Source of the DNA: Macrostomum hystrix
Taxonomy: Eukaryota > Animalia > Platyhelminthes
Direction: 5' to 3'
DNA length: 64,000 nucleotides
Assembly: GCA_950097015.1 (NCBI GenBank)
Contig: CATNEN010000024.1
Location: 7,062,576 to 7,126,575, forward strand
Part shown: piece after piece, positions 1 to 63,096 of the stretch
Numbering within the stretch: position 1 is the stretch's first letter
Layout: each line of letters begins with the position of its first letter
Translations under genes and position numbers: made by a program
Notes under the pieces: generated by a model
What the model saw: only the letters and a program-made list of their open reading frames with translations
Databases searched by the model: none
Told to the model about the DNA's origin: nothing

Positions 1-591
1 TGAATGTACAAGTGTACACTGATGACTCATTAATCTGCTAGCATTGAATCTCTGTCCGTGAATGTACAAGTGTACACTGATGACTCATCAATCTGCTAGC
101 ATTGAATCTCTCCCCGTGAATGTACAAGTGTACACTGATGACTCATCAATCTGCTAGCATTGAATCTCTGTCCGTGAATGTACAAGTGTACACTGATGAC
201 TCATCAATCTGCTAGCATTGAATCTCTGTCCGTGAATGTACAAGTGTACACGGATGACTCATCAATCTGCTAGCATTGAATCTCTCCCCGTGAATGTACA
301 AGTGTACACTGATGACTCATCAATCTGCTAGCATTGAATCTCTGTCCGTGAATATACAAGTGTACACGGATGACTCATCAATCTGCTAGCATTGAATCTC
401 TCCCCGTGAATGTACAAGTGTACACTGATGACTCATCAATCTGCTAGCATTGAATCTCTGTCCGTGAATGTACAAGTGTACACTGATGACTTATCAACCT
501 GCTAGCATTGCATCTCTCCCCGTGAATGTACAAGTGTACACTGATGACTCATCAATCTGCTAGCATTAAATCTCTGTCCGTGAATGTACAC
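1..591. repeat. 58-bp tandem repeat, 10 full copies plus a partial (probably continues left of the window)
   Basis: Unit tgaatgtacaagtgtacactgatgactcatcaatctgctagcattgaatctctgtccg recurs at 1, 59, 117 ... 523. Confidence 0.97.
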
Positions 592-1041
592 TCATGTCTC
601 ATGGCTAATGTCGAAACCATTGTCAACAAATTTGCTTTGATGAATCAGTGAAGTAAAGTTTTAGTTAACGTTAATATCAGTTTCACAACGAAAAATAAGA
701 AAGAATGATATAATTGTCGGTGGTTATGCAAAAGCAAACGAGACAAATGCACGACAAATATTTGACGAAAAGCTTTTACGATTAATCGCTTTAGCGACGA
801 AAAATTTTTTTCTTGAAATACAATTTTAACGTTTCGCTACGACATGATAAGCATTGAGTGTATAACAAGCTGCAGAAACTAGAAACTGACAGAGATAAAC
901 ATGTTTGTTATAATATACGAGCCATATCAGTTCCACTTTCCAACACAAAAATAGCATCGAATGACCAACAAACTCATCTTTAAACTGAAAAAGAAAATTT
1001 AAAACAGACTTGCAATTTTCTCTTAAAAACCCTCTTGAAGG

Positions 1042-10000: not shown

Positions 10001-10338
10001 GGCGGAGGACTTCTGCTGGCCTTAAATAAACATTTCCGACACTGGTTAAACCTCATTTAGAACCTCAGACAAAACCTCATACCAAGCCTTCTATAGATTC
10101 TAAAACCATGAACTTTCTGAAGTCCTGATGCAACCTCGACATTAACCCATAGAACATCAGAACCTCCCATACAACACAAGAACGTCCCGTACAACATAAG
10201 AATCTCCTATAGATATTTGCGTGATTGCTTTTCCTGCAATGGGATTCGGGACTCCGGGACTAGACGGAGTGGAAAATGGGATTACTAGGCATGTACGCTC
10301 GTAGGACTAAACGTGACGGCAAAAGAACTGATTGTGTT

Positions 10339-10411
<73 letters not shown>

Positions 10412-17482: not shown

Positions 17483-18302
17483 TTTGTAACAAATTGTCTA
17501 GACTGACTCCGTTTGCAGACCTTTTGACAACTTTTTAAATAATTTACACAGACTTAAGGAAGAATTTAATCGAGAACTTTAGTGCGAAATCTTGACACTA
17601 TTTTTTATGCTAGATTGAAATACTGAGGTATTTTTCTTATTAACTTAACTAATTCCTTTATAAATGGAAACAACCATTACTCTTCACCAATGTAGTAGCT
17701 TAGTTTGGATTCACGATAAATAAAAATTATTGACATGCAGGCTTAATTTACTTATCGCGTAATTTTGAATGAGCGCGCTAGTTTATCTTATCTACCAGTG
17801 CTTACTCCAATAAGTAAAGTTAACAGGCTTGCAAGAAATAAAAATATTTATTTATTTTTGCGTAATAACATATAGATTTAAAATGAAATAGTTTTTTTTC
17901 TTTTTTAGCAAGCTACTTCTTTGTTAATCTCAAACAAAACCGTCATCAATGCGATTGTTTCTAAAAGCACTGCTGAACCCAAATATAGTTAGGATTTTAA
18001 ATATAGTTTTCGTTGTTTAATCTGTTCTGAAACTAACTCAGAATGCTGTGAACTTGCAAAACAGGCTGTTTTTCGAGAACGTAGAAGTGAGAAGGATTGT
18101 GTTCTGCAAATAATGCGGATGCCGATGCTACCAATTACGGCAGAGTAGCTGTACCGCAGAACACTAGGGTAATTATGACTGATGAAAAAAACGTCATATT
18201 GTAGTAAACTGAAATCATTCGAAATATTTTGTTATACATTTGGTATTTATTTGTATATGGTTGCTTGCTTAAATGGCTTGTATTGATTGCATATGGCTGT
18301 AC

Positions 18303-18617
18303 CAGCGTGCGTGCCTAACGCGGCCTTCTGTCCTGCTGACTCAGCGGCGCCTGCGGCTGGCCGGGCATGTCATCCGGGCCGAAGCCTACTGCCCAGAGCC
18401 GCTGCAGGATGTCCTGCTGTGGACCTCGCAGGGACCGCGCGGGCGCGGCCAGGGACGATCAGCCCGCGATGTCGACCGTCTTTTTGAAGACGCGCGAGCA
18501 CCCAGCCAGACGGCCGGTGTGAAGCATGTTAGAGACCTGGCTCTGAAACGCGCGATTTGACGTTCCCCCTCTTGGCCACTTCTGTGGTCGGCGTGGGGCG
18601 TAACTATTATTATTATT
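18303..18617 (+). mobile_element. 5'-truncated RTE-type non-LTR retrotransposon 3' end
   Basis: Encodes RRLRLAGHVIR...RAI*, has a (TAT)n tail and a 12-bp TSD atatggctgtac (18291-18302 / 18618-18629); near-identical to 44340-44670. Confidence 0.85.
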
Positions 18618-20000
18618 ATATGGCTGTACAAGTTCATAGAAAATGCGCACTGATTAAAAAATTGTTTAAAAACTGTTAAGTCCTTAAATTTTGCGGAAAA
18701 ACGATTGACGATGATACGTTTTTTTGCTCTCATAATTTTTTGATTAAATTTTCAGGCGTTTAAGTTTTCGCAAGAATGTATAGGACCGTTATAGTTGCGA
18801 GAAATTAATTAGGCGATTTTTTTTATTAGCTTTAAATAAAAATCGTAGCGATCGTCGTTGTTACATAACGAACATTAATAAACAGTTATTATATTTTCAC
18901 TAACTTTATATGTAAATTTATTGCATTTGGATTATATTATTATTTCGTTATAAGCTGTCTCTTGGATTTGTCAAGTTTTTTGTTTACCGAAATATGGAGG
19001 ACATGTCATTTTTCATGTGAATGACAGTTTAATGTCAGTTAGATGTCAGTGCCTTTAAACTAGCACTGTGGATTTCACGATTCTATGGATAGTTTAATAA
19101 ATAAGGTTTGAAGTTTGACAGCTGCCTCGTTATGCAAGTGATGCTTTGACAATAGAAACAGCACGATGCCAATCGCCAAGCTCAATACACACTATCTTCA
19201 GGGAATGGATTGGTTCTTTGTTGCTGGGCTGTCAAAATGGGAGTCAATGTGGTTTTTCATCTGCTAAGCCTAATTGTCACATTTTTCTGACAATCTCTTT
19301 ATTGAGTGGCAATTATTTGGCAGATTTTCTAATTAGCTATAATGTGGCAGGATGTAGTGAATAGACGGTTGCCGAGCGATGATATTTCTAGCATTGCTAT
19401 CTGTCCTCTTTTGTTAAAGTACACGTATTGTACCTACTCTTGTAGAATGATAATAAAATAAACTAGCAAGCAGTCACCTTTGAAGGCAAACGCTGTCTGC
19501 AAACGTATGGAAATTAAGCCAAGGCAGAAAAAATACAGCTACCCCGGTACTAACTATATACAGCTGTATAATATTCAACAAACACAAAGTCCCCCTAGCA
19601 TTGCCAGGATCATGCAATTCTTTTTTGGGGTGAGTCAGGGACACGTACGCACTGACGTTTGAGCACTGGGCGGATATAGTAATCCGCATAAAATATGGTT
19701 TCAGACAGTGTCATAGTTGTCTAGCTTTGACTCAGCAACTGCACTCGCGTGCAAAGGCCCTCGATTACTAACGTGCAGAAGAGCAGTCATGGCTGCAATG
19801 CTGGCTAAGAAAATCAATGCATTTTCAGCTAAGAAGTCGTTCTGATCAAGTTAAATAAAATGAGTTGGAAAAAGTATTTGCGAGACAGCCAAACGCGCTT
19901 AATATAGCAGTTGCATGAGGCAATAATACGAGGGCAAGCTAAATTCGATGTTTATAAATGTTGAGTATCATACAGGTAAATTTAATTGCGTGTAAAAAAA

Positions 20001-22799
20001 CTATTTTCTTAAAAAACCGGAAACCTGTACATGATCTTGCAGTCGGCGAGCATTGTTCTGCGCCCCGGATTCAGCGTGATAGTTGCCAATGAATGAGCCC
20101 TCCTCACCATACTCACCTGAAAGTTAGTAAACCAAGGAAGCAACTAAGTACTTTTAGACATTCTTGACGGGTTTCAGACATTCGAGGAACTCACGATAGT
20201 CGATCACATCCACGGCGCACTGAGCAGAACTCTCGCTAGAGAGGCCGCTGACCGGAGAGAGCCTGTGTCCAGGCTGGTCAGGCTCCCAGACTCCGTCCAG
20301 CCTGTCGGGCTGCCGATATTCGCTGAACACCTCGGCGCGCGCCTCCGCCTGCGGATCATAGCCCCACCGGAGCTCTTGTTTGGCCACCTGGTAGGTTCGC
20401 CCAACCTGCCTGGTTGCCACGCGGATGCCGACTGCCAAGCCTGCCAGCAGCAGCAGCGTGAGGACGACCGCAGCGACGACCTGCGCGCTTGCGCCTGCCA
20501 GATTCTGCTGTGAAGCTGCCTCCGGTGGCTGCCGAATGGACACCGTAAGGTTCTTCAGCTGGCCTGTGATGTCGAAATCGGTCGAATAGAAACAGCGGGT
20601 ATCCCGGAGACAGTCCTGAGCCAGCATCCGACTGCCAGACAGCGACTGTGGCTTCTGAATCTGCAGGCTGCCCATAGCGGCTAAGGATCTGTACCGCAGG
20701 TTGAACACGGGGGTAAGACTGCGACCTTGAGTCAGCTGCGATCTGCAGGATGGCTGTATCCAGAGGACCACGCGGCCTCGATCGTTGTCAGTCTCCAGTG
20801 CGCAGCTGACGTTATCTCGGAACAGAGCCGAGCTAGGCAGCAGTGTTCTGGAGTCCAGTCTGAGGGAGACTAGGATTTCGACGCCGATCTTAGTCAGGAA
20901 GTTGGAGAACTGATCACTCAGACGGAATTCAAATCTCGTGCCGTTGCTTAAGTCGCATCGCTTGGAGTTGCAGTCGCTGTCGTCTTTGACTACAAAGTCT
21001 TCCATCGTAGGCCTCGGAATGAATACAATTTCACTTCCCTGACTTCCGACAGAGTAATCAGATGCACCGAGCAGCTGCGACTCTGTTGAATTAACTGAAG
21101 CCGTACATTCAAAGCGGTGACTAAAGTTTGTTCCAAGCACGGGATGCGAAGGTGGAACTCGGGTTATATTAATTGACAAGCTTCTCGAATAACTGACGGC
21201 TAATGTGGTCAGGTGCATCCAGTTGTCTATGGCGGAAGCCTGCTGACGAAATTCCTTATCAGACAATGCGACCCAGTTGGATTTATCCCCACTAGCGAGT
21301 AGCATGTAAAACACCGGTGTGATAGTTACGGAATTCAGTCCTGAGAATGTCACTGTACAGTTATAAGCCATAGATTCGCCTTCTATGGCGTACACTCTGT
21401 GAGGCAGCAGACCTGAAGTGGCAGATTCCAAGACGGAAGCCTGTGGAAAGCGGGGCATCGAGATTACTGCGACTTCAAACTCGAAAAACTTTGACCCGGC
21501 CTCGCATCTGTAGATGCCATTGTGCACATCAGACACAGATGACGTGAATTCGATCATGTTACCAGTTCTGAATATTCGCAAATCATCCACAAGACTCCAC
21601 TCGTCCAGATGAGCTGGGATAAGCGGCTTTCCGTCGCGATAAAATCGATAGACCTCGCTTTTATCGCTGCAAATGATTGGGCACACAAGGGCGGTGTTGT
21701 CCATGCCCGACATCACAGTCACCTTTCTCTGAAGATTTGGCACGACCTCGCATTCGCGAGATGCCGCAGTGCCATTGCAGCCCCGGTAAAAAACTTCTTC
21801 TAGGGGAATACGCACCCTGACCGGACCCGTGCTCACGTAGGGCTCAGAGTCGCCCGTCACCGATGCGATGGTGCAGATGCCGATGGAAAACTGAGGCATG
21901 CATTCTTCATAGAACAGCTTCACTTCCCTGCTGAGACCGCAGCTTGAGAACCACAGCTTGCCGTCTCTCAGATTTAGGTGCAACAGTTTGGCGCGGTTTC
22001 TGTGCATTGAGTCCATCTTTGAATGGTAATTAACAAAGAGAATCGAATTGCTGAGCTGATAAGTAATGCACGACGAAGAATCAAAGTACAGAATCATTCC
22101 CAGGTTAAGCTTCGCTTTCAGAAACTCCGGCGCTGACTCAATAGCTGCAACAATCTCATGTCTTAAAAAGTCGACTCTAGCAAAGCTATCATCATACGAG
22201 TAGCGAGTAATATTAGTGGCGAAGCTAACAGCACTGTCAGTGAGAAATCCTGGCGTGAAGCTGCGCCCAGAAGCAGACGATGACACCGCCGTCACCGGGT
22301 CCAGGTTCCAGATCCGCAGAGGCTTGGACTCCAGCCGGCCAGTGGAAAACTTCACTCTAACTAGCAGCTCCAGGCTCTCAGTGATGGCGTCCTTCTGTGA
22401 CAGTTCTGACTGGCCGATGTGCAGGCTGAAATCCTCAGCTTCCTTTAAGCTCGATGAGATTATGAATGGCAGGCTGCCTGCACAGCGCACCGCCGTCTCA
22501 GAAGCCGCAGTGCCAACCGAGCCCAGATCCACAACACCCGCTAATGCTGACTTCGGACACCGGAAGCTGAGCAGCCTTCTTAGACCGAGGCCTGTGTCTC
22601 CGGCAATGCGAAGCCTCAGTCCAATCTTCGTGCCCTTCCTGAGCACAGCGATCGCGCCCGAGTCACCGACCTCCCAGACTTCGTCCCAATTTAGGAGTAG
22701 CTTGGCAGACCCACTGCAGTTGAAGTACGGAGCCTGAGACCAGTTCACCGCCAGATGGACCGTGCTCAGCAGCAGCATGAGCAGAAACTGGTAGTGCAT
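20001..22799 (-). CDS. Paralogue A: type I membrane protein, two Ig domains, L1/neuroglian-like cytoplasmic tail with FIGNY motif; predicted join(20195-22799, 20001-20116), 906 aa
   Basis: Signal peptide; Ig motifs LVCPIIC..YRFYR..HNGIYRCEAG and EGESMAYNCTV..FECTASV; TM VVAAVVLTLLLLAGLAVGI. Donor TATC|gtgagt at 20195/20194 and acceptor ctaactttcag| at 20117/20116 (78-bp intron) give VIDYREYGEEGSFIGNY in frame. A further donor CAG|gtttcc near 20024 may add another exon. Confidence 0.85.
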
Positions 22800-24001
22800 G
22801 GTGCAGGTCTGACAATCGATCCATAACGATAATGGGAGGAATTAGCTTTCTAATAAAATATAATTTAGTCAAATTAGTCTAAAATTAAAAAAAATTTAAG
22901 GAACGGAAATATCACCACTAATAATTTTTGTAGTAGCATTAATTATATAAAGTGGTTTTGACTAAGGCCTTGACAACGATCAATAATTAATCTAAATGAT
23001 TTCTGTAAAGTTTTCCAGCAATCAAGTCAACACAAGGACAAAATGACTCACATTTATTTTCTTCTAGAAGGCTTCGTCTTGATATTAAGAACAAATGTGA
23101 TTATAAAAAAGAAAAAATAAAAAAGAAATAAAGAGACTATAAAAATTTCCCACTGCCGACTTTGCTGTGGAAACTACGTTTATTGAGAAGAGTTTTAAAT
23201 AGTTAAACTTTTTAGCCGCTAAGATTAAAACAAAAATAGGTGATCAGCCTTCAACTCTGAACCTGCAATTCTTTAAACTTGTTCTTAAATAAAAAAAAAT
23301 ATTTTTTCGTCTTCTAAAATTATAATCGTGATTTTGAGTTAAATTTGATTAAAAAAATAACTACCTACAATCCTATATCACACTGCGTTGAATAAAGTAT
23401 ACGCGTAATAAAGAGTTATGCATAATTCCCCGATGCTAAATTTCATATGTGATTAGTAGAATATTTAAATTGTGCTTCTATTTTTATGTGAACGAATATA
23501 ATTTCATAACGTTATGCAACTTCATCTGTCCTCATTTGTATCAGTTTTGGTAAACAAGATTGGTAAACTAGATTTATTTTCAATTCTGACCGTAAAATCA
23601 TATACGTATTCGTATTCTTAATTTGATAATCGCACACAAGACTTCATATTTCTTCAGCAATCTTCACTTGTTATAGATCCTTTAAATAAAGCGACTTTTA
23701 AGCGGTTCGTGCTCTGGTATCTTTTTGCTAAACAGAGTTGCAACAACTGCAGCGGAAGGCACAAGAATTTATAACATTACACTATAGTAGGAATAATTGT
23801 CTCCCTATCAGGGGTTTAAAATCGGAACAACGCGATACAAAAGAATCCTTATCTTTATTTCGATCGAAGGGAGAACCTGATAAAATATGTGCATTTATTA
23901 TAAACAAACGAACAGCATGTGGCAAGGGGACTTAATTAGAAATATGCGTTTGCTGAGCACAGTTAAAATATCCATACAAGCTCATAACAGGTTAAGCCGC
24001 A

Positions 24002-24316: not shown

Positions 24317-26391
24317 TCATTTACAAATAACAAACCCTAAGCGTTATTTGTTTGCATTGCATGAGAAAGACAATATAAATGAGCGAATTGTTTTGCCAAA
24401 TAATCTACGAGATATTTGAGTATAGTAGATATTATCGAGACTTTTACGTAGTGTTTCAAATTGTATTGTTTAAATTGATGGATTTTGATTGTCAAGTTTT
24501 CAATTCCATTCGAATAGTGTGGAAGCAGCGGTTTCGCGTTTAACTCGCAATTTAGTCCCTGAGCTCGATTCCGCGGCATTAATTTGGAGCGCTGCCGCGG
24601 AGCGAAGGTTTAGTGGCTTGTCGTGCAATTTACGAGTACGCCCTCAACAGTTGGACTATGTGAGAGATACAATTCAGACTACTGTCAACAGTAGAAAAGC
24701 AAAGACTTGGCTGCAAAATTCTCACATAACACAAAAAATATCGCCATAAAAATGGCAAGGCTAAAAGAGACTTCTGTGCACACTAAGAGTGGTGGCTATG
24801 GCTGACTGAAGGCAAACAAGCCAGAAACCGGTCTCGGTCTGCCAGCGCGAGGTTCGTTCCCCACTTTTAGTGTGCTACAGACTACCAAGCCCTTTTGCCG
24901 CCCGTTTTTATACCAAGGGGGGTTTTGACAGCGCCTGAATGCTAACAGCGTTGGGTGGTGACTGATTGGTTGACAGACTAGGCGATGGTATCCTGTGGTT
25001 GAGCTTCGCCTATTAGGCTTGATCCGTGAAATAGGAGAAGTTTGTGTCAGGTTGTGTATGGTGGCCTAGTTACACCTGTTGTTGCTCTGTAAGGTTCAGC
25101 AGTTCGTCTATATAAAGGTGGGTGACCACCGAAGAAGGAGATAATGCAGGCACATTTGGGTGACATTCTGATGAATTTTGAAGGCCTGGCAAGGCCGCAC
25201 TGAGGTGCAGTGCTAATTCGTGTATACTAGCGCTTATGGGAAAAATCTGACCTTTGGCCCTAACCATTAAATATCTCGACGTTCTGAAGAGCTGGCGACT
25301 TGATTATTGTTTAAGAAGATGCGCAATTAAAAGTTGGCCCGTGTTCTTGAGTTTCGTGTGATTGCGTTGCCCCATTCGGGTGCAGCAGAAAAATTGTCTT
25401 TGTGCTCTTGTGTTAAGGGCCAACCTCCTGGGCACAGTGAGAGTGTACACTGCCTGACGATGAGAAAATCAGGACAGATGTACACACCTGTGTGAGTGTG
25501 TGCCTGCTTACAGTATCTGTGTGCGAGTGTGCTCAGTAGTCAGTGAATGGGCAGAGCTGCCTGATCCAAATGATTCGCGAGTGCCCTCAACCCGTCTGCC
25601 AATATTATTATTATAATAGCCCAGATCGGGCCAACTGTAAGTGGCACAGCCGCAGCTATTGCAAGGAACTATGTACACTACGAAACAATGTGTGTATGTA
25701 CTTGAGCAACACTTTTAATTACCAATTGATTCAGTTCACTCAGCTGCGAAATTGGTACTAGCATCAGCTGGGGTAGAAATTAAAGCTATAGTGTCATGGC
25801 GTCCTCCCAGTCCAAAAGGGGGCAGAGCTTCAGAAATATTAGAAATAGTTTTTAGTTTTGACAAGAACTTTATATGCAGCCTCTAAAAATGACATTATTC
25901 ATCTATACTCCATGACTCGACTGGTTGTTTTGCAAAGTGAAAGCGGCTGGAATATTTTTACACATTCGTGGACACATTTTTTGACAAGATGAACGTTGCA
26001 AATGCTACACCAAGTTATTAGGAGTCTACAGTAAAACAAAATTTGACGCTTCGATTTCATTCCTAGACGAGGCATACTTCGCAATCTGGTCTGTAGGCTT
26101 TGGCTGCGGCATAGTAACCTTGTTGTGTGAGCTAAAACCTGTTCACAATCGCATCTGAAGATATTTATCAGGCTATTTAAACTGCGATGCCAACTTTAAG
26201 ACGCATTTTCTGCGACTTTTTTCTATGAACTCAGAGGCAGTCTTATCGAAGAAGATTTTCTAAACTAGCTTACTTACTATATTGCTTGCTTGCGGACTTA
26301 TGTTCGCATAGCAGTTATTATAACTGTTTTATGCAGTTAGTTATCCGGGCGTGCAGTGGATTTCCAAATTTGGAGTGATACATAGAATATA

Positions 26392-28010: not shown

Positions 28011-29380
28011 TAGTAGAGTAAGTAGACCTCATCTTCACTTAGCGCCATTGTCTCATATTGAAGGGATATTATGGTTGCACGCCTTGAAAATCTAAGCCCA
28101 TGAATTACTTTATCTGTCTTGCCAAGCTGACCATAATTTGGGCCATAGACATGTGGAGCGTGCACCAATGAAGCGTATTGTGACACGCTTCAACTGTCTA
28201 TGGGTAAGAGGTCCCCAAGGTCATTCAATCCCAGTGGAGAATGGCTATGATTGCACCAATGTATTTGACAGAGAGCGCGCACTCTTTGGCATTCTCTACA
28301 ATATCGTTTTAATCATGATCGCTTTCATAACTTGCGCAAATGGTCTTGTCCATAGACTACAGCCGCGCCCTAGGCGCCCTCTACAAAATATCATTGGCTG
28401 ACTTGTCTATGGTTCAGATAGAATATAATCTATGGTGGCCATCGATTTCAGACAGCCAAAGCGCCTGACACTGAATCGCGCCATCGGACCTCTTTTTGCT
28501 TTGGGGTTGCTCAGCTTTTTCTTGTTGTTGTTTCTGTGTTGCCGTAGCATTGCAAATCACTACAAAAGGCCATGCACCCAGAAGTTTACCATTCGACTAC
28601 CGACCACCAATTGACGTTGGTCAGAGCCTTCTCAGATTATGAGATTAGTGAGTTTTGAAAATAAATTTGTCTATGGCCCCTTTTCCTCGTCATCAGGACG
28701 ATGGCTACTTACACCGGAAATCGTAAAAGAAAACATTCTCAAAGAACCATTCTCAATCCAAAGCTTCGTTCGTTACGCTCATTACATGTATTTTAGATTG
28801 CAAAGAAATCGAATTGTAGAATTAAATTTTATAAATTTTCTATAATTTCCTCGGCGTATATCTAGATGCATTTTATAAGGCATTGCAGCATAAAATTGTA
28901 ACTAAGCAGACTATGCAAGAATCCAGAAAATTGACAAAAAAGATTTAAGCATTTTAGGAACAGGTACAATAAGTGTGACAATGTGAGGATTGATTTAGGC
29001 TAAATATTAGGCGATTAAAAATTAAATAAATTTTGCTACTAAAATATAACATTTTTTTCGCAGCCAGAAAACTTTCATGCGAAAAAGTTTGGCATTTATT
29101 GTACTCATGAATAGTAGGAGCAGGGCACAACAAAACGTTTCGCTAATCTAAAAAATATTTCAAAGACTGTTAGCCGTCTAAGCTTGATCGATTCTCGTCT
29201 TGGTTATATAACATTATAAATTAATTGACTGCAGGCGTTGTCAGTGAATCCGACTCGAGAATTTTAATCAGGTACATTTCATAGATGTACGGTGCACCGA
29301 TGCCAATAAGGTCCTTACGACAGTTCAGAATAGTCCTTACTGCTGACGGAAACAATCGAGACATTCAGCACCTGCTTGTT

Positions 29381-31930
29381 TCATGCAACAACTAGCGCTG
29401 GGGCGTCCTCGACATCGGCTGCGCCAGCCCTGATGTAATCCTTGAAGGCCTCCTCCCTGGCCTCGGCTCTGGGGTTATGACCAACGCGGAGCTCATTCTC
29501 CTCAACTAGGTAGGCGCGCTCCAGAGACCTAGTCATTATGTACACAGCTACCAAGGCTACCAGTACAGCGACCGCTGCTGCGATGGCGACACCAGCGATT
29601 GTCCCCATGGCTAAGCCAGTTTCCTTCGAGGGCAGTGGCACAACCAGGAAGTTCAGTCCCACCCTGAGGAAGTCGAGACCGCTGGCCAAATCAAACTCAG
29701 TCGAGTAGAAGCAAAACGGGTCAGACCGGCAGTCCATAGTGCCAGCGGCAATGCTTGGAATACCGTAAGCTGACTTATTGTGCTGGAGATTACTCATCAC
29801 TTTGCTGTTCGGGTAACTCAGCTTGAACACGGCTGTCAGATTCTTCCGTTTCTGCAGCTCGTCTAGCACACTCTGGCTCGATATTGGCCGTATTAGATAA
29901 GATAAAGTTGCGCTCTTTGTATCGAAATGGAACATGGACGCATAATCAACAAACAGAGGCTTGACGTCGGTAAGAAGTAGGTCATCCAGCATAAAGTAGG
30001 CAGAAATCTCGACGCCCAAATCCCTCAAGTAGGCGGCAGTGTCTTTGGATAGAGAGAATTTAAAGTTGGCGCCATTAATTACGCCACAGTTCTGAACGGA
30101 GCAGTTATTGTTCGGATTGATGACGAAGCTCTCTCGTGTTAAACGCTTTAAAAATATGACGTCGGTGCCAGTTTGAGTTCGATATTCCGACATGCCTACT
30201 AGCGCAGATTCGACCGAATCAACAGACGCATTGCACACAAACCGGTGGCTGAAGTTTGTGTGCAGTGATGGATTCACTGGCGGCACGCGGACCACATTCA
30301 CTGATAAAGTTTTTTGGGGCCCAGCAGTTGTTGTTGTAATACTCATCCACTTGTCGGTAGCTAATAACTTCTGACGAAATTCTTCGCTGGTAAGACCAGC
30401 CCAGTTAGTCCGACTACCACTCGGCAAGTGCATGTAGAACATGGGAGACACTGTCACAGAGCTCAGTCCCCCGAATCTAGCCGTGCAGTTATAGATCAAT
30501 GACTCGCCCTCCATCGCGAACACTTTTTCAGGCAGCAGACCGGAAGCCGCAGAGCCTGAGCTGCTTCCGCTCATGGAAGACGCATTCGTGGTAAATTGCG
30601 GCATTGAAATTACTGTCACATTAAACTGGAACGACTTTGAACCAGCTTCACACCTGTAGGGGCCCGAGTGCTCATCTGATACGGAAGTGGTAAACTCTAT
30701 AATATTGCCAGTTTTGTACACCCGAATACCTTTGATCAGAGTCCATTCTTCGGAAGCGAGCAATAAGTTGTCGCCTCGAAAGAATCGGTACGCCTGGCTC
30801 TTGTCGTCGCAGAGAATGGGACAGACAAGCGCAGTGGTGTCCATGCCTGATATGATAGTCACATTGCCATTGGCATTTCTTGCCACTTCACAGCGTCTCA
30901 AATGCATAGAGTATGCAGGGTATTTAACATGGTTAACCGGAAAACGTTCATCAACAGCCTGAATACTATCATAGGGCTCGGACTTTCCGGAGAGTGACAT
31001 GAGGGTGCAGATGCCTATTGTGCTTTGCGGTTTCGCTTTATTGTAGAGCAAAGCAATTTCGTGCTTCAGTCCGGAGGCAGAAAATTCAAAATAGCCACTT
31101 TCTATGTCTAGATGCATCAGCTTCTGCAGATTCTGAAGGCGGAAGTCAAACTTCGAATAGTAGCTTACAAACAGAATGGCCTCGCCAGGCGGGCTGTACA
31201 GACAGGAGCCGGCATTGAAATACAATTTGGCGCCCATTGTGATTTTGCTTTTAAAAAACCGAGGTGACGATTTAACAATCTGCGAAACCGTAGGCTCAAT
31301 AAAGAGAACCGATGGAAACGGACCGTCTTGTGAATAGTTCAGCTTCGTCATTAGTTCAATAGCAGCCGCGGTGAGAAATTTTCTTTGCAAGGCGCCTATC
31401 GAACCAGCATTGAATAAACTCAAGGGATCTAGGTTGTACAGAAAAAGAGGATTTGACTGAATCGAGCCGCCAGCCCATTCAACGCGCACCCTCAGCTTCA
31501 CATTCCTATTGGCCACTTCGTCGTATTGAATAGACGAAACGCCCATTTTTAGCTCGAATTTGCCCTCGACTGTGACACTCGACTGTACGGTAAACGGAAT
31601 AGAACCTGGGCACCGAACCACGGACGAACCAGTGAGCTGTGTGCTCAAATCAACCTCTTCAGACCGTCCGTCAAGCGGGCACTCGTACATTAGAATCGTT
31701 TTCAGATGGCTACCGACGACACCGCTTACTGACACATTGATATAGATGATCTTGTCCTTGGTCAGTATAGAAAGCACGCTGGACGATCCGGCTTCCCAGG
31801 TGTCGCTCCAGAACAGAAGCACCTTGTGGTTAGGAGAGAAGTCGAAGCGAGGCATCCGCTGGGCCGCGACGCCGATGATGCAGCCGCTGCCAAGGCCGAT
31901 TAGCAGAGCCAATAGCACAGAGGACCTCAT
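29381..31930 (-). CDS. Paralogue B: single-exon type I membrane Ig protein, 849 aa, short L1-like tail
   Basis: Intact ORF colinear with A: MPRF..W.AG, NLDP, SGMDTTALVCPILC, HSGPYRCEAG, CFYSTEFD, TM, then RAYLVEENELRVGHNPRAEAREEAFKDY. Confidence 0.9.
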   Translation of the reverse strand: MRSSVLLALLIGLGSGCIIGVAAQRMPRFDFSPNHKVLLFWSDTWEAGSSSVLSILTKDKIIYINVSVSGVVGSHLKTILMYECPLDGRSEEVDLSTQLTGSSVVRCPGSIPFTVQSSVTVEGKFELKMGVSSIQYDEVANRNVKLRVRVEWAGGSIQSNPLFLYNLDPLSLFNAGSIGALQRKFLTAAAIELMTKLNYSQDGPFPSVLFIEPTVSQIVKSSPRFFKSKITMGAKLYFNAGSCLYSPPGEAILFVSYYSKFDFRLQNLQKLMHLDIESGYFEFSASGLKHEIALLYNKAKPQSTIGICTLMSLSGKSEPYDSIQAVDERFPVNHVKYPAYSMHLRRCEVARNANGNVTIISGMDTTALVCPILCDDKSQAYRFFRGDNLLLASEEWTLIKGIRVYKTGNIIEFTTSVSDEHSGPYRCEAGSKSFQFNVTVISMPQFTTNASSMSGSSSGSAASGLLPEKVFAMEGESLIYNCTARFGGLSSVTVSPMFYMHLPSGSRTNWAGLTSEEFRQKLLATDKWMSITTTTAGPQKTLSVNVVRVPPVNPSLHTNFSHRFVCNASVDSVESALVGMSEYRTQTGTDVIFLKRLTRESFVINPNNNCSVQNCGVINGANFKFSLSKDTAAYLRDLGVEISAYFMLDDLLLTDVKPLFVDYASMFHFDTKSATLSYLIRPISSQSVLDELQKRKNLTAVFKLSYPNSKVMSNLQHNKSAYGIPSIAAGTMDCRSDPFCFYSTEFDLASGLDFLRVGLNFLVVPLPSKETGLAMGTIAGVAIAAAVAVLVALVAVYIMTRSLERAYLVEENELRVGHNPRAEAREEAFKDYIRAGAADVEDAPALVVA

Positions 31931-38481: not shown

Positions 38482-41037
38482 CTACATTGCAATGTCCCGT
38501 TCACCGACCGGCTCAGCGTATGAGGCCCGCTCCGACTGGCGAACGTACTCCTTGAACTCCTCCTCCATGGCTTCGGCATTCGGATTGTGCCCCTGCTCGA
38601 GCTCCTTCTCCTCCAGGTGGTACGTCTTTGCCGGAGGTCTGTTCGCGAAATATACCACAAGAACCAGTAGCAAAATTATTACTAAAACACAAACGACAAT
38701 CACAACTATCATCATTTTCATGCTGGCGTCGGACAAAGGTGATTCGGGGCTTTTGAAGTCTAGGTTGACAGAAAGGAAGCTCAGACTGCCAGATGTGTCA
38801 AAGTCGGTCGAATAAAAGCACATTGGGTCAGCACGACAGTCCTTTGAACCCAGAGCGACGACCGGAGCTCCATATCGACTCTTCAACATGTTGACGTTGC
38901 CCATGTCAGCTGCATTCTTGTAACGGAAGTTGAACACGGGCGTCAGGCTGCTTCGCTTCTGCAGCTCAGTGCGCACATCTTCTCGAGTGATGGGAAGTAT
39001 TTGGTACGTGATGCTCGTGCCGTTCGACCTGATCACAGAAACAGTTTCGTTCATCAGAATCCTGACGTCAGTGAGCAGGAAGTTGTCAATACGAAGAAAC
39101 AGGTCCACATCGACCCCGATGTAAGATAGGTGTGCAGAGAACTCCGGGCTCAAAGCAAACTGGAATGACGCGCCGTTACCAAGGTTGCACTTTTGAGTCA
39201 CACAGTCATTGCTCGGATTCAGCACAAAGCTGTCCTTCGTTGGACGAGGGACGAACACGACGTCACCACCAGTCTGGGCAGCATAGCTAGACATGCCCAG
39301 CTCCTTGGCATCAGCACTGGGCACACTGGCGTTGCACAAGAATCTGTGAGTAAAGTTCGTGCCGAACGAAGCCTGTTGCGGAGGAACGCTTTCGATTGAA
39401 ACATTCATCAGCTGAAATCCTGATCCCGCTGCTGGATAGCTGATGCCGACGGCTGAGCTTCCACTACGGCTAACACGCAAGTTGAAGGCCGCTAGATTCT
39501 GCTCGGCCCAATTCACGACACCGCCGGAGACGGATGGTAAATAGAATTTCGGATCCAACGACACTGAAGATCTCAGTCCGGAGAAACTCACGCCACAACT
39601 GTAGGACAAGCTCTCACCTTGCATGGCAAATACCTTCGGAGGCAATGTGCCACTATGGCCTCCGATAGTGGTCGCGAATGTCGGCATGGACACGACAGAT
39701 ACGTAGAATGTAAAGCTGACACTTGCAGCCATTTCAGCTGTGCACCTGTACTCACCAGCCTGAATTGACGAGACATCTTTTGAAAACTCGATGATGTTTG
39801 ATGTTTTTGAGATCCGGACACCTTGTGTTCCGAAATCACTCCAGTCGAATGATCTAGATGGTATGAGTAGCTGACCGTTGCGATAAAAAGTAAACACTGT
39901 TGTCGGGTCATCGCAAATGATTGGGCATACCAACTGGGAACTGTCCATTCCAGAGTAGATGGTAACATTTTCTTGAGTTCCACGCACCAACGTGCATGTT
40001 GAGCTCAGACGTTTATCGGGACACGTTGTGTAGGAAAAGTCTGTGCTCGGAATTATACTTCGAACCTCGCTGATCTTTGAGTAGGGCACCACTTCGCCAG
40101 AAAAGGACACGGATAAACATATTGCAATTCGAGAAGGGTTGTTCCACTGACTGTAGGATTGAGCAACCGACTTGTACAACTGGCACCTTGCATACCAAAG
40201 AATGCCAGTGGTTCTATCAAGAAACATTGTCTTCATTCTCTCCATTCCAAAACCCGGAATTTTAGAATCATATGTCGTAAAAAGGAAGCTTCTGTCGTTC
40301 TGGACACTAGAGCAGCCACTCGGGTCAAAGAACAAAATGGCTCCCATATTGAGCTTGTGTCTGAAGAAACTTGGCGCTGATTGCAGAGCACTCACGAGTC
40401 GGTTGTCCAGAAATGTAAAATTGTGAAAGTCACCTGTTCCGAGATTCATCCGAGTCATCAGCTGGATAGACGGCTCAGTGAGAAAATGACGCTGATATCC
40501 TGCTGGTGTTGACGAATCTTGGTGAAAATCGCTGATTGGATCCAAGTTCCAAATAGACAGAGTGTTTGACATGAGAACTCCGCCACCGGCATACTCTACC
40601 CTGGCTGTAATAATCACCTTGGATGAAAACACTTCAGAGAATGGCACTGAAGAAGTCCCCATTCTAAGCTCGAATTCGTCAGTGCTGTTTACGTACCGTA
40701 GTTTCAATGAAAATTTAATATTTTTTAACGTGTAGTCTGTTGTAGAATTGTTCAGTGAGTCTAGCTTAACTGGTTCGTAAGAATGGCTTTGACAATTTAG
40801 GAGCAGAGTGCGTTTGAGTTCGGATCGATTGGCCACACCATCGACTTGCACTTTAAGGAAGATTTTTTCATCTTTTTCATATTTTTTCAGTAGACCAGTC
40901 GAAGTTTGTGTCCCCGCTTCCCAGACATCACCCCAGTTCAGAAGCAGCTTCGATGTCTGAGAATAAACGAACCGAGGCATTTTTCCGGCTGATGCCGTAC
41001 AAGACAGTATCAAAATTAGTACAAAAGCCAGCTCCAT
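38482..41037 (-). CDS. Paralogue C: single-exon type I membrane Ig protein, 851 aa, short L1-like tail
   Basis: Intact ORF colinear with A and B: SGMDSSQLVCPIIC, QAGEYRC, QGESLSYSC, CFYSTDFD, TM MMIVVIVVCVLVIILLLVLVVYF, tail KTYHLEEKELEQGHNPNAEAMEEEFKEY. Confidence 0.9.
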   Translation of the reverse strand: MELAFVLILILSCTASAGKMPRFVYSQTSKLLLNWGDVWEAGTQTSTGLLKKYEKDEKIFLKVQVDGVANRSELKRTLLLNCQSHSYEPVKLDSLNNSTTDYTLKNIKFSLKLRYVNSTDEFELRMGTSSVPFSEVFSSKVIITARVEYAGGGVLMSNTLSIWNLDPISDFHQDSSTPAGYQRHFLTEPSIQLMTRMNLGTGDFHNFTFLDNRLVSALQSAPSFFRHKLNMGAILFFDPSGCSSVQNDRSFLFTTYDSKIPGFGMERMKTMFLDRTTGILWYARCQLYKSVAQSYSQWNNPSRIAICLSVSFSGEVVPYSKISEVRSIIPSTDFSYTTCPDKRLSSTCTLVRGTQENVTIYSGMDSSQLVCPIICDDPTTVFTFYRNGQLLIPSRSFDWSDFGTQGVRISKTSNIIEFSKDVSSIQAGEYRCTAEMAASVSFTFYVSVVSMPTFATTIGGHSGTLPPKVFAMQGESLSYSCGVSFSGLRSSVSLDPKFYLPSVSGGVVNWAEQNLAAFNLRVSRSGSSAVGISYPAAGSGFQLMNVSIESVPPQQASFGTNFTHRFLCNASVPSADAKELGMSSYAAQTGGDVVFVPRPTKDSFVLNPSNDCVTQKCNLGNGASFQFALSPEFSAHLSYIGVDVDLFLRIDNFLLTDVRILMNETVSVIRSNGTSITYQILPITREDVRTELQKRSSLTPVFNFRYKNAADMGNVNMLKSRYGAPVVALGSKDCRADPMCFYSTDFDTSGSLSFLSVNLDFKSPESPLSDASMKMMIVVIVVCVLVIILLLVLVVYFANRPPAKTYHLEEKELEQGHNPNAEAMEEEFKEYVRQSERASYAEPVGERDIAM

Positions 41038-48466: not shown

Positions 48467-51062
48467 CTACTCACCGTACAAGAAGCTGGCCTTTTCAAAG
48501 GCTGTAGGATGCATTGCAATGTCCCGTTCACCGACCGGCTCAGCGTATGAGGCCCGCTCCGACTGGCGAACGTACTCCTTGAACTCCTCCTCCTTGGCTT
48601 CGGCATTCGGATTGTGCCCCTGCTCGAGCTCCTTCTCCTCCAGGTGGTACGTCTTTGCCGGAGGGTCTGTTCGCGAAATATACCACAAGAACCAGTAGCA
48701 AAATTATTACTAAAACACAAACGACAATCACAACTATCATCATTTTCATGCTGGCGTCGGACAAAGGTGATTCGGGGCTTTTGAAGTCTAGGTTGACAGA
48801 AAGGAAGCTCAGACTGCCAGATGTGTCAAAGTCGGTCGAATAAAAGCACATTGGGTCAGCACGACAGTCCTTTGAACCCAGAGCGACGACCGGAGCTCCA
48901 TATCGACTCTTCAACATGTTGACGTTGCCCATGTCAGCTGCATTCTTGTAACGGAAGTTGAACACGGGCGTCAGGCTGCTTCGCTTCTGCAGCTCAGTGC
49001 GCACATCTTCTCGAGTGATGGGAAGTATTTGGTACGTGATGCTCGTGCCGTTCGACCTGATCACAGAAACAGTTTCATTCATCAGAATCCTGACGTCAGT
49101 GAGCAGGAAGTTGTCAATACGAAGAAACAGGTCCACATCGACCCCGATGTAAGATAGGTGTGCAGAGAACTCCGGGCTCAAAGCAAACTTGAATGACGCG
49201 CCGTTACCAAGGTTGCACTTTTGAGTCACACAGTCATTGCTCGGATTCAGCACAAAGCTGTCCTTCGTTGGACGAGGGACGAACACGACGTCACCACCAG
49301 TCTGGGCTGCATAGCTAGACATGCCCAACTCCTTGGCATCAGCACTGGGCACACTGGCGTTGCACAAGAATCTGTGAGTAAAGTTCGTGCCGAACGAAGC
49401 CTGTTGCGGAGGAACGCTTTCGATTGAAACATTCATCAGCTGAAATCCTGATCCCGCTGCTGGATAGCTTATGCCGACGGCTGAGCTTCCACTACGGCTA
49501 ACACGCAAGTTGAAGGCCGCTAGATTCTGCTCGGCCCAATTCACGACACCGCCAGATACGGATGGCAAATAGAATTTCGGATCCAACGACACTGAAGATC
49601 TCAGTCCGGAGAAACTCACGCCACAACTGTAGGACAAGCTCTCACCTTGCATCGCAAATACCTTCGGAGGCAAGGTGCCACTATGGCCTCCGATAGTGGT
49701 CGCGAATGTCGGCATGGACACGACAGATACGTAGAATGTAAAGCTGACACTTGCAGTCATTCCAGCTGTGCACCTGTACTCACCAGCCTGAATTGACGAG
49801 ACATCTTTTGAAAACTCGATGATGTTTGATGTTCTTGAGATCCGGACACCTTGTGTTCCGAAATCACTCCAGTCGGATGATCTAGGTGGTATGAGTAGCT
49901 GACCGTTGCGATAAAAAGTAAACACTGTTGTCGGGTCATCGCAAATGATTGGGCATACCAACTGGGAACTGTCCATTCCAGAGTAGATGGTAACATTTTC
50001 TTGAGTTCCACGCACCAACGTGCACGTTGAGCTCAGTGGATCGGGGACACGTTGTGTAGGAAAAGTCTGTGCTCGGAATTCTACTTCGAACCTCGCTGAT
50101 CTTTGAGTAGGGCACCACTTCGCCAGAAAAGGACACGGATAAACATATTGCAACATGAGAAGGGTTGACCCTCTGACTGTAGAATTGAGCAACTGACTTG
50201 TACAACTGGCACCTTGCATACCAAAGAATGCCAGTGGTTCTATCAAGAAACATTGTCTTCATTCTCTCTATTCCAAACCCGGAATTTTAGAATCATATGT
50301 CGTAAAAAGGAAGCTTCTGTCGTTCTGGTCACTAGAGCAGCCACTCGGGTCAAAGAACAAAATGGCTCCCATATTGAGCTTGTGTCTGAAGAAACTTGGT
50401 GCTGATTGCAGAGCACTCACGATTCGGTTGTCCAGAAATGTAAAATTGTGAAAGTCACCTGTTCCGAGATTCATCCGAGTCATCAGCTGGATAGACGGCT
50501 CAGTGAGAAAATGACGCTGATATCTGCTGGTGTTGGCGAATCTTGGGGGAAATCGCTGATTGGATCCAGTTCCAAATAGACAGAGTGTTTGACGTGAGTA
50601 CTCCGCCACCGGCATACTCCACCCTGGCTGTAATAATCACCTTGGATGAAAACACACCAGAGAATGGCACTGAAGAAGTCCCCATTCTAAGCTCGAATTC
50701 GTCAGTACTTGTCGACAACGATTTTAAACTAAATCGAATATCATTTGGGATTGTGCAAAAGATCGGTGGAGGTGCTAGTTGTCAAGGAGGCCAGATCAAC
50801 AGAATCTACAGTTGCTTTAGTGGGACAACTGACAAGCAGTGTTCGCTTAAGACCAGAGCCCTCCAGGCACGCCATCAACTCGCACCCTAAGAGTGAGTTT
50901 GCTATCTTTGCTGAGGAGTGCCATGGAGTTTTGCGATCCTGCCTCCCAGACATCACTCCAGACAAGTAGCAACTTTGATGCTTCAGAATACACAAACCGA
51001 GGCATTCGTTCACAATAGACTGACCAAGTCTGGAGACAAATTAACAGCAATAACAGTTTCAT
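48467..51062 (-). pseudogene. Paralogue D: frameshifted copy closely related to C (pseudogene or consensus indel errors)
   Basis: ATG at 51062 with signal peptide MKLLLLLICLQTWSVYC. About 7 frameshifts (~50860, 50760, 50567, 50523, 50276, 50038, 48663). The tail continues ...DIAMHPTAFEKASFLY then G|gtgagt. Confidence 0.82.
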
Positions 51063-62867: not shown

Positions 62868-63096
62868 ATTAGCGTCTCGCAAAATGAAATGCGTCGAGAA
62901 TGCTGCATACAAAAATTTATTATCAAAAGTTCTTTTTATATTGAGCGTGGGGATCGGTGCGAGAGCGTGGCGTGAGTCAAAAACATCCCCGGCTTAGCGC
63001 GCCGGCAGGCGCGGTGCACCCACCCCTCGTCTAGGCGGCCGGGGTTTGAGTGTGAATGCACCGCAGACGGCGCTGCGTGCGGGCTTGGCCGCCACA
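62868..63096 (-). mobile_element. 5' LTR of the CsRn1-like Gypsy element
   Basis: Starts TGTGGCGG at 63096, directly upstream of the PBS; homologous to 55088-55326. Confidence 0.87.

What the first reader, a model, noticed from the sequence alone, without database searches (positions are those of the whole stretch)
20001..20195. Hidden EEGSFIGNY exon 3' of the whole array: possible protocadherin-like variable/constant splicing
Seen: a 78-bp GT-AG intron (20117-20194, with CTAAC and tttcag) joins A in phase 1 to an exon the ORF track misses, giving VDVIDYREYGEEGSFIGNYHAES. Established: L1-family tails carry DSxxxY...F(T/N)EDGSFIGQY, the ankyrin-binding motif. Seen: by eye this is the only FIGxY-type exon in the ~1 kb downstream of any of the four paralogues. 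D has an equally strong phase-1 donor at the analogous position (SFLY G|gtgagt, 48475/48474), which would read SFLYGEYGEEGSFIGNY if joined to this exon. C has a weaker phase-1 candidate (GTC G|gtgaac) upstream of its stop. Inference: large variable exons may splice to one shared constant tail exon, as in clustered protocadherins.
Basis: partly seen in the sequence, partly recalled or inferred. Interest (0 to 1): 0.85.

Follow-up and report, generated by a model that had tools for sequence, protein, structure and literature searches.

The report
Real FIGNY tail exon, not shared

Summary
On the minus strand, paralogue A's large exon ends at 20195. A 78-bp GT-AG intron (20194-20117) follows. A terminal exon (20116-20001) then reads (R)EYGEEGSFIGNY...FLRK*.

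One RNA-like contig (run X2) carries exactly this joint. The same phase-1 intron in front of a FIGxY exon occurs in three other paralogues of this genome. Macrostomum lignano proteins read straight across that point.

By its size and contig count the genome is the published Macrostomum hystrix assembly. The family was found only in Macrostomum. It joins an L1-type (Bravo_FIGEY) cytoplasmic tail to an ectodomain that is not L1-like.

The protocadherin-like shared-exon idea is not supported:
- B and C carry in-frame stops before the ancestral donor position, and C has lost the GT.
- Transcript-based M. lignano orthologues of the B and D types end without FIGxY and with different C-termini.
- A lone D-type copy 4 Mb away keeps the same donor-like sequence with no FIGxY exon near it.
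- The C30 cluster gives each gene its own FIGxY exon.
- No contig in four runs ends loose at acceptor 20116.

Contigs cannot prove absence, so a D-to-20116 splice stays open at about 5%.

The parts
20195..22799 (-). Paralogue A, coding exon 1: signal peptide, about 770-aa ectodomain with one weak Ig domain, TM helix, and an L1-type juxtamembrane tail ending ...CAVDVIDY plus the first base of an Arg codon
   Evidence: ORF 20154-22799. Ig_2 at 20.6 bits, below the cut-off of 27. RNA-like contigs cover 20189-22708. 35-41% identical over nearly full length to M. lignano proteins.
20117..20194 (-). 78-bp phase-1 GT-AG intron (GTGAGT ... TACTAAC ... tttcag). If retained, the ORF ends ...DYREFLECLKPVKNV* at 20154
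   Evidence: Sequence. X2 record 2 skips exactly 78 bases, with ends CT..AC on the + strand at cut +6. 0 differences between the C24 and C6 copies.
20001..20116 (-). Terminal coding exon: completes the Arg codon, then EYGEEGSFIGNYHAESGAQNNARRLQDHVQVSGFLRK and the stop (20003-20001)
   Evidence: Aligns by eye with the terminal exons of L003 (EFGEQGSFIGGY...), L011, L010 and L038. 1 synonymous difference from the C6 copy.
19657..20000 (-). 3' UTR, at least this far
   Evidence: Contigs X2 record 2 (from 19932), X5 record 26 (19908-20115) and X4 record 17 (19657-19823). No depth in 18785-19572.
29381..31930 (-). Paralogue B: full ORF with a tail cut by TGA (29383-29381). It has no FIGxY and no donor before the stop
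   Evidence: 60% identical to M. lignano B-type P0016.
29315..29380 (-). B: 21 in-frame codons after the TGA, plus TAA. They read NKQVLNVSIVSVSSKDYSELS*, 15 of 21 identical to the M. lignano B-type end (TKQMLNASIVSVHSKDDLELS), and the final stop is at the same place
   Evidence: my own count by eye.
38482..41037 (-). Paralogue C: full ORF ending ...GERDIAM with TAG. The ancestral donor further on has decayed (GGTGAG to GATGAG)
48475..51056 (-). Paralogue D (D-type): the tail frame ends ...HPTAFEKASFLY G|GTGAGTAG (donor at 48474). The window copy carries one-base indels; its C6 counterpart L005 has an intact 866-aa open frame (864 aa from its ATG)

Best explanation
The finding is the true last coding exon of one gene, paralogue A.

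The gene belongs to a family found only in Macrostomum. Its members are type I membrane proteins with a signal peptide, an ectodomain of about 770 aa with one recognisable Ig domain, a TM helix and an L1/neurofascin-type (Bravo_FIGEY) cytoplasmic tail.

In this family the last 20-40 codons, which hold the (E/D)GSF(I/L)GxY motif, sit on their own small exon behind a phase-1 intron. In A that intron is 78 bp (20194-20117). Removing it replaces the read-through end ...DYREFLECLKPVKNV* by ...DY-R-EYGEEGSFIGNY....

By analogy with L1 family proteins, this motif would bind ankyrin when its tyrosine is unphosphorylated. That step is inferred, not shown.

The exon serves A alone. The upstream paralogues are whole-gene relatives that lost the FIGxY part. 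B and C end at stop codons ahead of the old donor. D-type genes (D/L005, L006, L007) keep the old donor position but either stop two codons into it (YGE*) or use an exon I could not recognise, as their M. lignano orthologues appear to.

Shown: the sequence, the joint, the homologous introns and the tails of the relatives. Inferred: ankyrin binding, and that no other paralogue uses the exon.
For: Splice and exon:
- Joint 20116|20195 in X2 record 2, with 179 letters on the shorter side and 0 other letters.
- In those runs cover lies on the gene body (19657-22708) and on the repeat at 18297-18619. The flanks 17800-18193, 18785-19572 and 22725-23700 have none. This is RNA-like, although the run kind is not on record.
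- Phase-1 introns before the FIGxY exon in L003 (76 nt), L010 (about 170 nt) and L011 (about 630 nt).
- M. lignano P0003 reads DDIDF-K-EFGEQGSFIGGY, exactly as the L003 splice predicts.
- P0001 and P0002 carry PF13882 at 60.9 and 56.7 bits. L038 exon 3 reaches 36.5 bits, and the L011 and L038 terminal exons 20.5 and 17.5 bits.
- The tail residues Y803, E809, G813, P816, E819, E823, F825 and Y828 of A are invariant across 16 family members.

Private use by A:
- Stops in B and C, and the lost GT in C.
- M. lignano tails: 0 of 5 D-type, 0 of 5 B-type and 0 of 4 P0005-type cluster members have FIGxY, and the three types end differently.
- That annotation was built from RNA-seq (passages of PMC5730564).
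- In the C30 cluster three genes each have their own FIGxY/FLGEY exon.
- L007 is a lone D-type gene with the same donor-like end and no FIGxY exon in 10 kb. The only FIGxY pattern hit on its contig is A's exon about 4 Mb away.
- No loose end at 20116 in 4 of 4 runs.
- Mean intron length in M. hystrix is 692 nt (table passage of PMC10468722). The shared-exon model needs introns of 9-28 kb inside the window.
Against: - The joint is seen in one contig of one run at depth 3.7. The other three runs have no contig across it.
- The run kind is not on record.
- Six bases (GTGAGT) are identical at the donor and just after the acceptor. A template-switch artefact would look the same in a contig.
- A's own tail pieces do not reach Pfam PF13882 when scanned exon by exon.
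- For private use, contigs drop rare forms and cannot show absence.
- D, L005 and L006 keep an open frame up to a strong phase-1 GTGAGT. I found no own terminal exon for them in 7-15 kb.
- X5 record 26 ends at 20115, one base short of the exon edge. I cannot explain this.
Confidence: 0.8

Rival explanations
1. Protocadherin/UGT1A-like locus. The large exons of D-type paralogues (D/L005, L006, perhaps C through GTC G|GTGAAC) each start a transcript that is spliced over the downstream paralogues to acceptor 20116, so that several ectodomains share one FIGNY tail.
For: - All paralogues lie on the same strand, and the only FIGxY exon sits at the 3' end of the array.
- The C6 copy of the array shows the same layout with a fifth member, L006.
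- D, L005 and L006 keep an open frame to a phase-1 GTGAGT at the family's ancestral intron position.
- No relic FIGxY exon and no other conserved exon lies downstream of them.
- The spacers hold transposon remains rather than recognisable host genes.
Against: - B and C stop before any usable donor, and C's GT is lost.
- Transcript-based M. lignano D-type and B-type proteins end differently from each other and without FIGxY. B-type and D-type genes appear to be neighbours there too, judged from consecutive accessions and equal contig lengths.
- L007 has the same end with no FIGxY exon near it.
- C30 genes each own their exon.
- No loose end at 20116 in four runs.
- The model needs introns of 28 kb or more, against a mean of 692 nt.
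- ATTAAA lies about 215 nt after the D-type stop and is kept in L006 (read by eye).
Confidence: 0.05
2. There is no real intron. The 78-base skip is a reverse-transcription or assembly artefact between the two GTGAGT copies, and A ends at ...REFLECLKPVKNV*.
For: A six-base direct repeat flanks the skipped part (both = 6). There is one contig at depth 3.7 in one run. Intron retention cannot be excluded for part of the transcripts.
Against: - Of the seven equivalent cuts, one gives GT-AG, with TACTAAC and a pyrimidine run before the AG.
- The skip puts a conserved family motif in frame.
- Homologous phase-1 introns stand at the same point in three paralogues, and M. lignano proteins read across them.
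- The exon shows 1 synonymous change between the two copies.
Confidence: 0.03
3. D-type paralogues are spliced at ...FLY G|GT to a short private terminal exon that has diverged too far to recognise. This would match M. lignano, where D-type proteins continue ESV(G/E)PDQAVAAPENIQVEQTDQV after ...SSFMY.
For: 3 of 5 M. lignano D-type cluster members continue for 23 residues past the Y, and one other model diverges right there (...SSFMYALIF), as expected at a splice site. The donor is kept in D, L005, L006 and L007.
Against: tblastn with the M. lignano end found nothing credible on the right strand in the window or in the fetched flanks. tblastx and blastn found no conserved exon between the L007/C flanks and the D/L006 flanks within 4 kb. 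Read through, the frame stops after two codons, so no splice is needed.
Confidence: 0.3

Closest known systems
L1 family cell adhesion molecules (L1CAM, neurofascin, NrCAM, CHL1; Drosophila Neuroglian)
   Same: The cytoplasmic tail is of the Pfam Bravo_FIGEY type. It has a juxtamembrane ..TY.V.E.E...G.NP..EA..E.F.EY stretch and a C-terminal (E/D)GSFIGxY. In Neuroglian the FIGQY ankyrin-interacting parts are isoform-specific, so they lie on alternative 3' exons, and tyrosine phosphorylation lowers ankyrin binding (passages of PMC4384726).
   Different: The ectodomain is not the 6 Ig + FnIII array (architecture recalled). Pfam sees one Ig_2 match below its cut-off in 7 of 16 members, and a family profile finds no solved relative at E below 0.1. 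A's motif is FIGNY, and A's tail pieces alone miss the Pfam cut-off. Ankyrin binding is untested.
Macrostomum lignano 'Bravo_FIGEY domain-containing' and 'Ig-like domain-containing' proteins (e.g. PAA48275.1, A0A1I8GDY1, PAA58181.1, PAA58182.1)
   Same: Full-length homologues, 35-41% identical to A, with E from 1e-140 to 1e-203. They have the same domain order and the same split into FIGxY-bearing and FIGxY-less subtypes.
   Different: A has no close orthologue among them: its best hits are the L003-type and B-type proteins at 41%. These proteins carry only automatic names. I found no paper on them: 'FIGQY' with 'flatworm' gave 0 papers, and none of the 10 papers listed holds FIGQY.
Clustered protocadherin and UGT1A loci (variable first exons spliced to shared constant exons; recalled, no call)
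   Same: Tandem same-strand large exons that each encode signal peptide, ectodomain, TM and the proximal tail, with one small tail exon at the 3' end of the array.
   Different: Only A's joint is seen. Two of the four large exons stop before any donor. The orthologues' transcripts do not share a C-terminus, and other clusters of the same family give each gene its own tail exon.

Membership tests
L1 family CAM | Cytoplasmic Bravo_FIGEY domain (PF13882) above the curated cut-off of 23.8 bits | tested here: inconclusive
A's exon-1 tail (96 aa) and its exon-2 peptide (37 aa), scanned apart, gave no hit at E up to 10. Relatives pass: P0001 60.9 bits, P0002 56.7 bits, L038 exon 3 36.5 bits. 5 of 16 aligned members match at E up to 0.01.
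L1 family CAM | C-terminal FIGQY-type motif preceded by acidic residues and GS | tested here: met
   EEGSFIGNY in the terminal exon.
L1 family CAM | Ectodomain of six Ig and several FnIII domains (architecture recalled) | tested here: not met
   Only one Ig_2 match, at 20.6 bits against a cut-off of 27, and no fn3. The profile search against solved structures found nothing at E below 0.1.
L1 family CAM | Ankyrin binding through the FIGQY tyrosine | not testable with these tools
   Needs a pull-down or a co-localisation assay.
Macrostomum Ig/Bravo_FIGEY membrane protein family | Full-length sequence homology | tested here: met
   E 3.4e-141 and 7.5e-140. 6 hits at E up to 1e-30 among 1.84 billion representatives.
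Macrostomum Ig/Bravo_FIGEY membrane protein family | Phase-1 intron directly before a small FIGxY terminal exon | tested here: met
   A. L003, L010 and L011. L038 has its FIGGY exon about 1.8 kb after exon 3.
Variable-exon / constant-exon locus (clustered protocadherin, UGT1A type) | Every variable exon ends in an open frame at a donor of the same phase | tested here: not met
   Met for A and D/L005 (phase 1). B has a TGA and no GTRAG before it. C has a TAG and GATGAG in place of GGTGAG.
Variable-exon / constant-exon locus (clustered protocadherin, UGT1A type) | Transcripts joining several variable exons to one acceptor | tested here: inconclusive
   Only the 20195|20116 joint was seen, and no loose end at 20116 in 4 runs. 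These are contigs at depth 2-6, which cannot show absence.
Variable-exon / constant-exon locus (clustered protocadherin, UGT1A type) | Paralogous products share an identical C-terminus | tested here: not met
   In M. lignano the B-type, D-type, P0005-type and FIGxY-type proteins end differently, and that annotation is transcript-based. Not tested in M. hystrix itself.

The most novel reading that the evidence does not exclude
In M. hystrix the D-type large exons (D/L005, L006) keep a strong phase-1 donor at the ancestral intron position and have no recognisable terminal exon of their own. They might be spliced over C, B and A to acceptor 20116. That would make a small invertebrate array in which different ectodomains share one ankyrin-binding FIGNY tail, a protocadherin-like design that arose independently in a flatworm.
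Probability: 0.05. Interest if true: 0.75.

Novelty: new member of a known kind. Interest (0 to 1): 0.27.

Why it matters
An ORF-only view of paralogue A misses its last 38 codons, which are the part most likely to link the protein to the membrane skeleton. The case also shows a family, so far found only in Macrostomum, that carries an L1-type tail on a different ectodomain, and in which paralogues have repeatedly lost the FIGxY end. That gives a natural series for asking what ankyrin coupling adds. As a gene-structure finding it is ordinary: a conserved terminal micro-exon. The exciting reading, a shared constant exon, is not supported.

Tried and rejected
- Own FIGxY exons or relics for B, C, D, L006 and L007. 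I ran a relaxed six-frame regex on the window and on nine fetched flanks. I also ran tblastn with six terminal-exon peptides and blastn with A's intron, exon 2 and UTR. Nothing credible came up: the best peptide hit had E 0.19 in the wrong context, and blastn gave no hit.
- A homologue of the M. lignano D-type end. tblastn with the last 60 residues of P0006 matched only the part before ...SSFMY.
- A conserved exon between the L007/C flanks and the D/L006 flanks. tblastx and blastn with word size 7 over 4 kb found nothing.
- Short transcript-derived proteins of this species. I searched the large protein collection with the last 130 aa of L005 and got no hit at E up to 0.01. That says nothing about expression.
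- 'D is a pseudogene.' I rejected this. The window copy differs from L005 by 1 mismatch and 21 one-base gaps, most of them run-length differences.
- The C14 cluster as a second 'one tail exon per array' case. I rejected this too, because the other C14 copies hold decayed TM/tail exon relics with 3 TGA each.
- The B site AGC A|GTAAGG near 29340. It lies after B's TGA and corresponds to the family's ...SK... codons, not to the family intron.
- The two other genome hits of the motif. One lies in what I read, by eye, as an FHA-like protein (L041). The other is an isolated ...QDGSFIGKY* of unknown context (L040). I did not pursue them.
- A PF13882 scan of the whole genome gave only 3 exon-wise matches, all in this family. 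So I could not compare with a canonical L1 gene.
- Earlier notes of this scan: two look-ups gave nothing.
- I did not look at supplements of the two genome papers. The published M. hystrix annotation may already hold this gene model.
- The naive position-by-position comparison is valid only for about 22965-18790. Outside that range it is out of register.
Full report
WHAT IS THERE

On the minus strand the 881-codon ORF of paralogue A (20154-22799) contains ...GAC TAT C|GTGAGT at 20195/20194. Seventy-eight bases further on, after TACTAAC and tttcag, an exon starts at 20116. In phase 1 it reads (R)EYGEEGSFIGNYHAESGAQNNARRLQDHVQVSGFLRK, and its stop ends at 20001.

A strict six-frame motif search finds this one place in the 64 kb. 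A relaxed search gives 8 window hits, of which only this one has a tail-like context.

IS THE INTRON REAL

One search for public runs listed 5 runs, none on record as RNA. Four of them (X2-X5) come from one study. Each is about 45 million letters of contigs, yet they hold 32-58% of the sampled words of a 3.2-kb gene.

Laid on 17800-23700, their contigs cover 19657-22708 and a repeat at 18297-18619. They leave 17800-18193, 18785-19572 and 22725-23700 empty. That pattern is what transcripts give, not 0.2x genomic DNA. This is my inference.

In X2, record 2 (442 nt, no other letters) lies on 19932-20110 and 20189-20451. The skipped 78 bases have ends CT..AC on the + strand when the cut is moved by 6, which is GT..AG at 20194-20117 on the gene's strand. 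This is 1 of 4 runs. X3 and X4 have no contig there. X5 has a contig at 19908-20115 that stops one base short of the exon edge, without loose letters, and I cannot explain that.

Six bases (GTGAGT) are the same at the donor and right after the acceptor, so a template-switch artefact would give the same contig. Four things speak against that: the canonical ends, the branch-point-like TACTAAC, the in-frame motif and the comparative evidence below.

THE FAMILY AND THE ORGANISM

The window's assembly has 220,453,370 bases in 42 contigs. Those are the figures printed for Macrostomum hystrix in a table of PMC10468722 (passages seen).

A finds only Macrostomum lignano proteins. There were two in the word-indexed search. 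The exhaustive HMMER search of 1.84 billion representatives gave 10 at E up to 0.001.

Relatives P0001 and P0002 carry Pfam Bravo_FIGEY at 60.9 and 56.7 bits and end ...FAEDGSFIGGY... and ...FTEDGSFIGEY.... A's own tail pieces, scanned apart, do not reach Pfam. I did not scan a joined tail. Even so, the juxtamembrane residues Y803, E809, G813, P816, E819, E823, F825 and Y828 are invariant in a 16-member alignment.

The ectodomain shows one Ig_2 match below the cut-off and nothing else. The family profile has no solved relative at E below 0.1.

A CONSERVED GENE STRUCTURE

The genome holds many paralogues (42 matches).

In three of them the FIGxY part is a separate exon behind a phase-1 intron:
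- L003: DDIDF A|GTAAGA ... cag|AA GAA TTC, 76 nt.
- L010: about 170 nt.
- L011: about 630 nt.

M. lignano P0003 reads DDIDF-K-EFGEQGSFIGGY, just as the L003 splice predicts. A's DVIDY^R-EYGEEGSF lines up with L003's DDIDF^K-EFGEQGSF, so A's intron is the family's intron.

Genome-wide, the pattern (E/D/Q/H)GSF[ILVM]GxY has 9 hits against 1 in the reversed control. Seven of them lie just downstream of a family exon on the same strand: A, its C6 copy, C14, three in C30, and C38. The shorter pattern alone is not enriched (13 against 15).

THE ARRAY

A, B, C and D all lie on the minus strand. A 496-kb contig, C6, holds the same array again: A' is 99% identical and D's flank is 99.85% identical. C6 has a fifth member, L006. 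It is probably a leftover haplotig. The paper mentions such contigs, and variants at 21015, 21420, 21943 and 22126 in the contigs match C24/C6 differences.

D in the window looks broken, but it differs from its C6 counterpart L005 (intact 866-aa open frame) by 1 mismatch and 21 one-base gaps, most of them run-length differences. I read this as assembly error near the end of contig C24. The window is the last 64 kb of that contig.

The spacers hold a Tc1/mariner-type transposase between inverted repeats, a gag-like zinc knuckle and other repeats. No recognisable host gene is there.

DOES THE ARRAY SHARE THE EXON

For:
- All members are on the same strand, with the single FIGxY exon at the 3' end.
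- D/L005 and L006 (and L007 elsewhere) keep an open frame up to ...(F/L)L(Y/F) G|GTGAG, in phase 1, at the family's intron position.
- I found no relic FIGxY exon, no homologue of the M. lignano D-type end and no conserved exon in their flanks.

Against:
- B ends at a TGA with no GTRAG before it. The 21 codons after the TGA still resemble the M. lignano B-type end (15 of 21, my count) and stop at the same place, so B's ancestral end was ...ELS*, without FIGxY.
- C ends at a TAG, and its old donor reads GATGAG.
- M. lignano proteins come from a genome-guided, RNA-seq-based transcriptome (passages of PMC5730564). 0 of 5 D-type members, 0 of 5 B-type members and 0 of 4 P0005-type members have FIGxY, and the three types end differently. 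B-type and D-type genes seem to be neighbours there as well, which I infer from consecutive accessions on contigs of equal length. L005 is 69% identical to P0022 and B is 60% identical to P0016.
- L007 is a D-type gene 4 Mb away on the + strand. It keeps GGTGAGA, but it has no FIGxY exon within 10 kb, and the only FIGxY pattern hit on its contig is A's exon about 4 Mb away.
- In the C30 cluster each of three genes has its own FIGxY/FLGEY exon.
- The other copies in the C14 cluster carry decayed TM/tail relics with three TGA each, which shows that tails in this family decay after duplication.
- No loose end is listed at 20116 in any of the four runs. The contigs are thin (depth 2-6) and cannot prove absence.
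- The model needs introns of 9 to 28 kb or more, where the published mean is 692 nt.

VERDICT

The hidden exon and its intron are real, and they are the ordinary, conserved last exon of paralogue A.

The tail is of the L1 type and the ectodomain is not. The gene should therefore be filed with the Macrostomum Bravo_FIGEY/Ig-like family, not with L1 CAMs.

The most likely function of the exon is to add an ankyrin-binding, tyrosine-regulated motif. This is inferred from L1 and Neuroglian work (passages of PMC4384726).

B and C are tail-truncated paralogues. D-type genes either stop two codons past the old donor or use an exon I could not find.

I put the shared-exon reading at about 5%.

LITERATURE

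'FIGQY' together with 'flatworm' gave 0 papers. None of the 10 papers listed for the wider flatworm terms holds FIGQY. One search listed general FIGQY/ankyrin papers, and I saw only that listing. I did not look at supplements.

Noticed in passing
window 47300-52340 (paralogue D and flanks) against L005 (C6:201782-207286): 1 mismatch and 21 single-base gaps in 5.5 kb, most of them run-length differences. The last part of contig C24 looks less polished than contig C6, which holds the same array and is probably a leftover haplotig. ORF-based calls of 'pseudogene' in this window are unsafe.
   Followed up: yes
window 29315-29383: B's TGA stop is followed by 21 in-frame codons. 15 of the 21 are identical to the M. 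lignano B-type C-terminus, and the final stop is at the same place. This points to a recent nonsense change or to read-through. Both genome copies (C24 and C6) have it.
   Followed up: partly
G000 contig C14 1.27-1.66 Mb and C1:13.39 Mb (L012-L020, L038): Eight further family copies with intact exons 1 and 2. Only the 3'-most one (L015/L038) has an intact TM/tail exon and a FIGGY exon. Four others carry a decayed TM-exon relic with 3 TGA each, so they were probably copied from an already truncated gene.
   Followed up: partly
window 18297-18619 and 44338-44661: A 324-bp repeat, 96% identical between the two places, lies 1.4 kb after A's stop and 3.8 kb after D's donor. It has the highest contig depth of the laid stretch (up to about 75), with many variants and loose ends on both sides. 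It is probably an expressed dispersed repeat, not an exon of these genes.
   Followed up: partly
window 20111-20116 and 20189-20194: The acceptor is directly followed by GTGAGT (tttcag|GTGAGT), the same six bases as at the donor. This is the form of a recursive splice site, and it makes the joint ambiguous by 6 bases. The contig runs on through the exon, so I saw no sign of re-splicing.
   Followed up: partly
window 19908-20115 (run X5, record 26): A contig ends one base short of the exon 2 boundary with no loose letters. It could be a graph branch or simply thin cover; I cannot tell which.
   Followed up: no
window 26390-28012: A Tc1/mariner-type element between B and A: a 333-aa ORF with DDE_3 and HTH domains (26568-27569, + strand), flanked by 155-bp inverted repeats that are 99.4% identical.
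   Followed up: partly
window 1-16600: A chain of long tandem-repeat arrays (1-590, 1152-2220, 2535-3034, 3222-3993, 4683-5722, 7553-8297, 9110-9758, 10845-12265, 13535-16604). Several of them carry long ORFs, and one has low-complexity extensin-like and keratin-B2-like Pfam matches.
   Followed up: no
window 57474-63100: A GC-rich (65-68%) retroelement remnant with RNase H and integrase domains (59987-61711, minus strand) and an inverted duplicate pair, 55442-56250 and 57474-58284.
   Followed up: no
G000 whole genome: An exon-wise scan with Pfam PF13882 found only 3 matches, all in this family (two in C30, one in C14). No canonical L1/neuroglian-type gene showed up this way. Either its tail is split over small exons, or this family is the main carrier of the domain in this species.
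   Followed up: no
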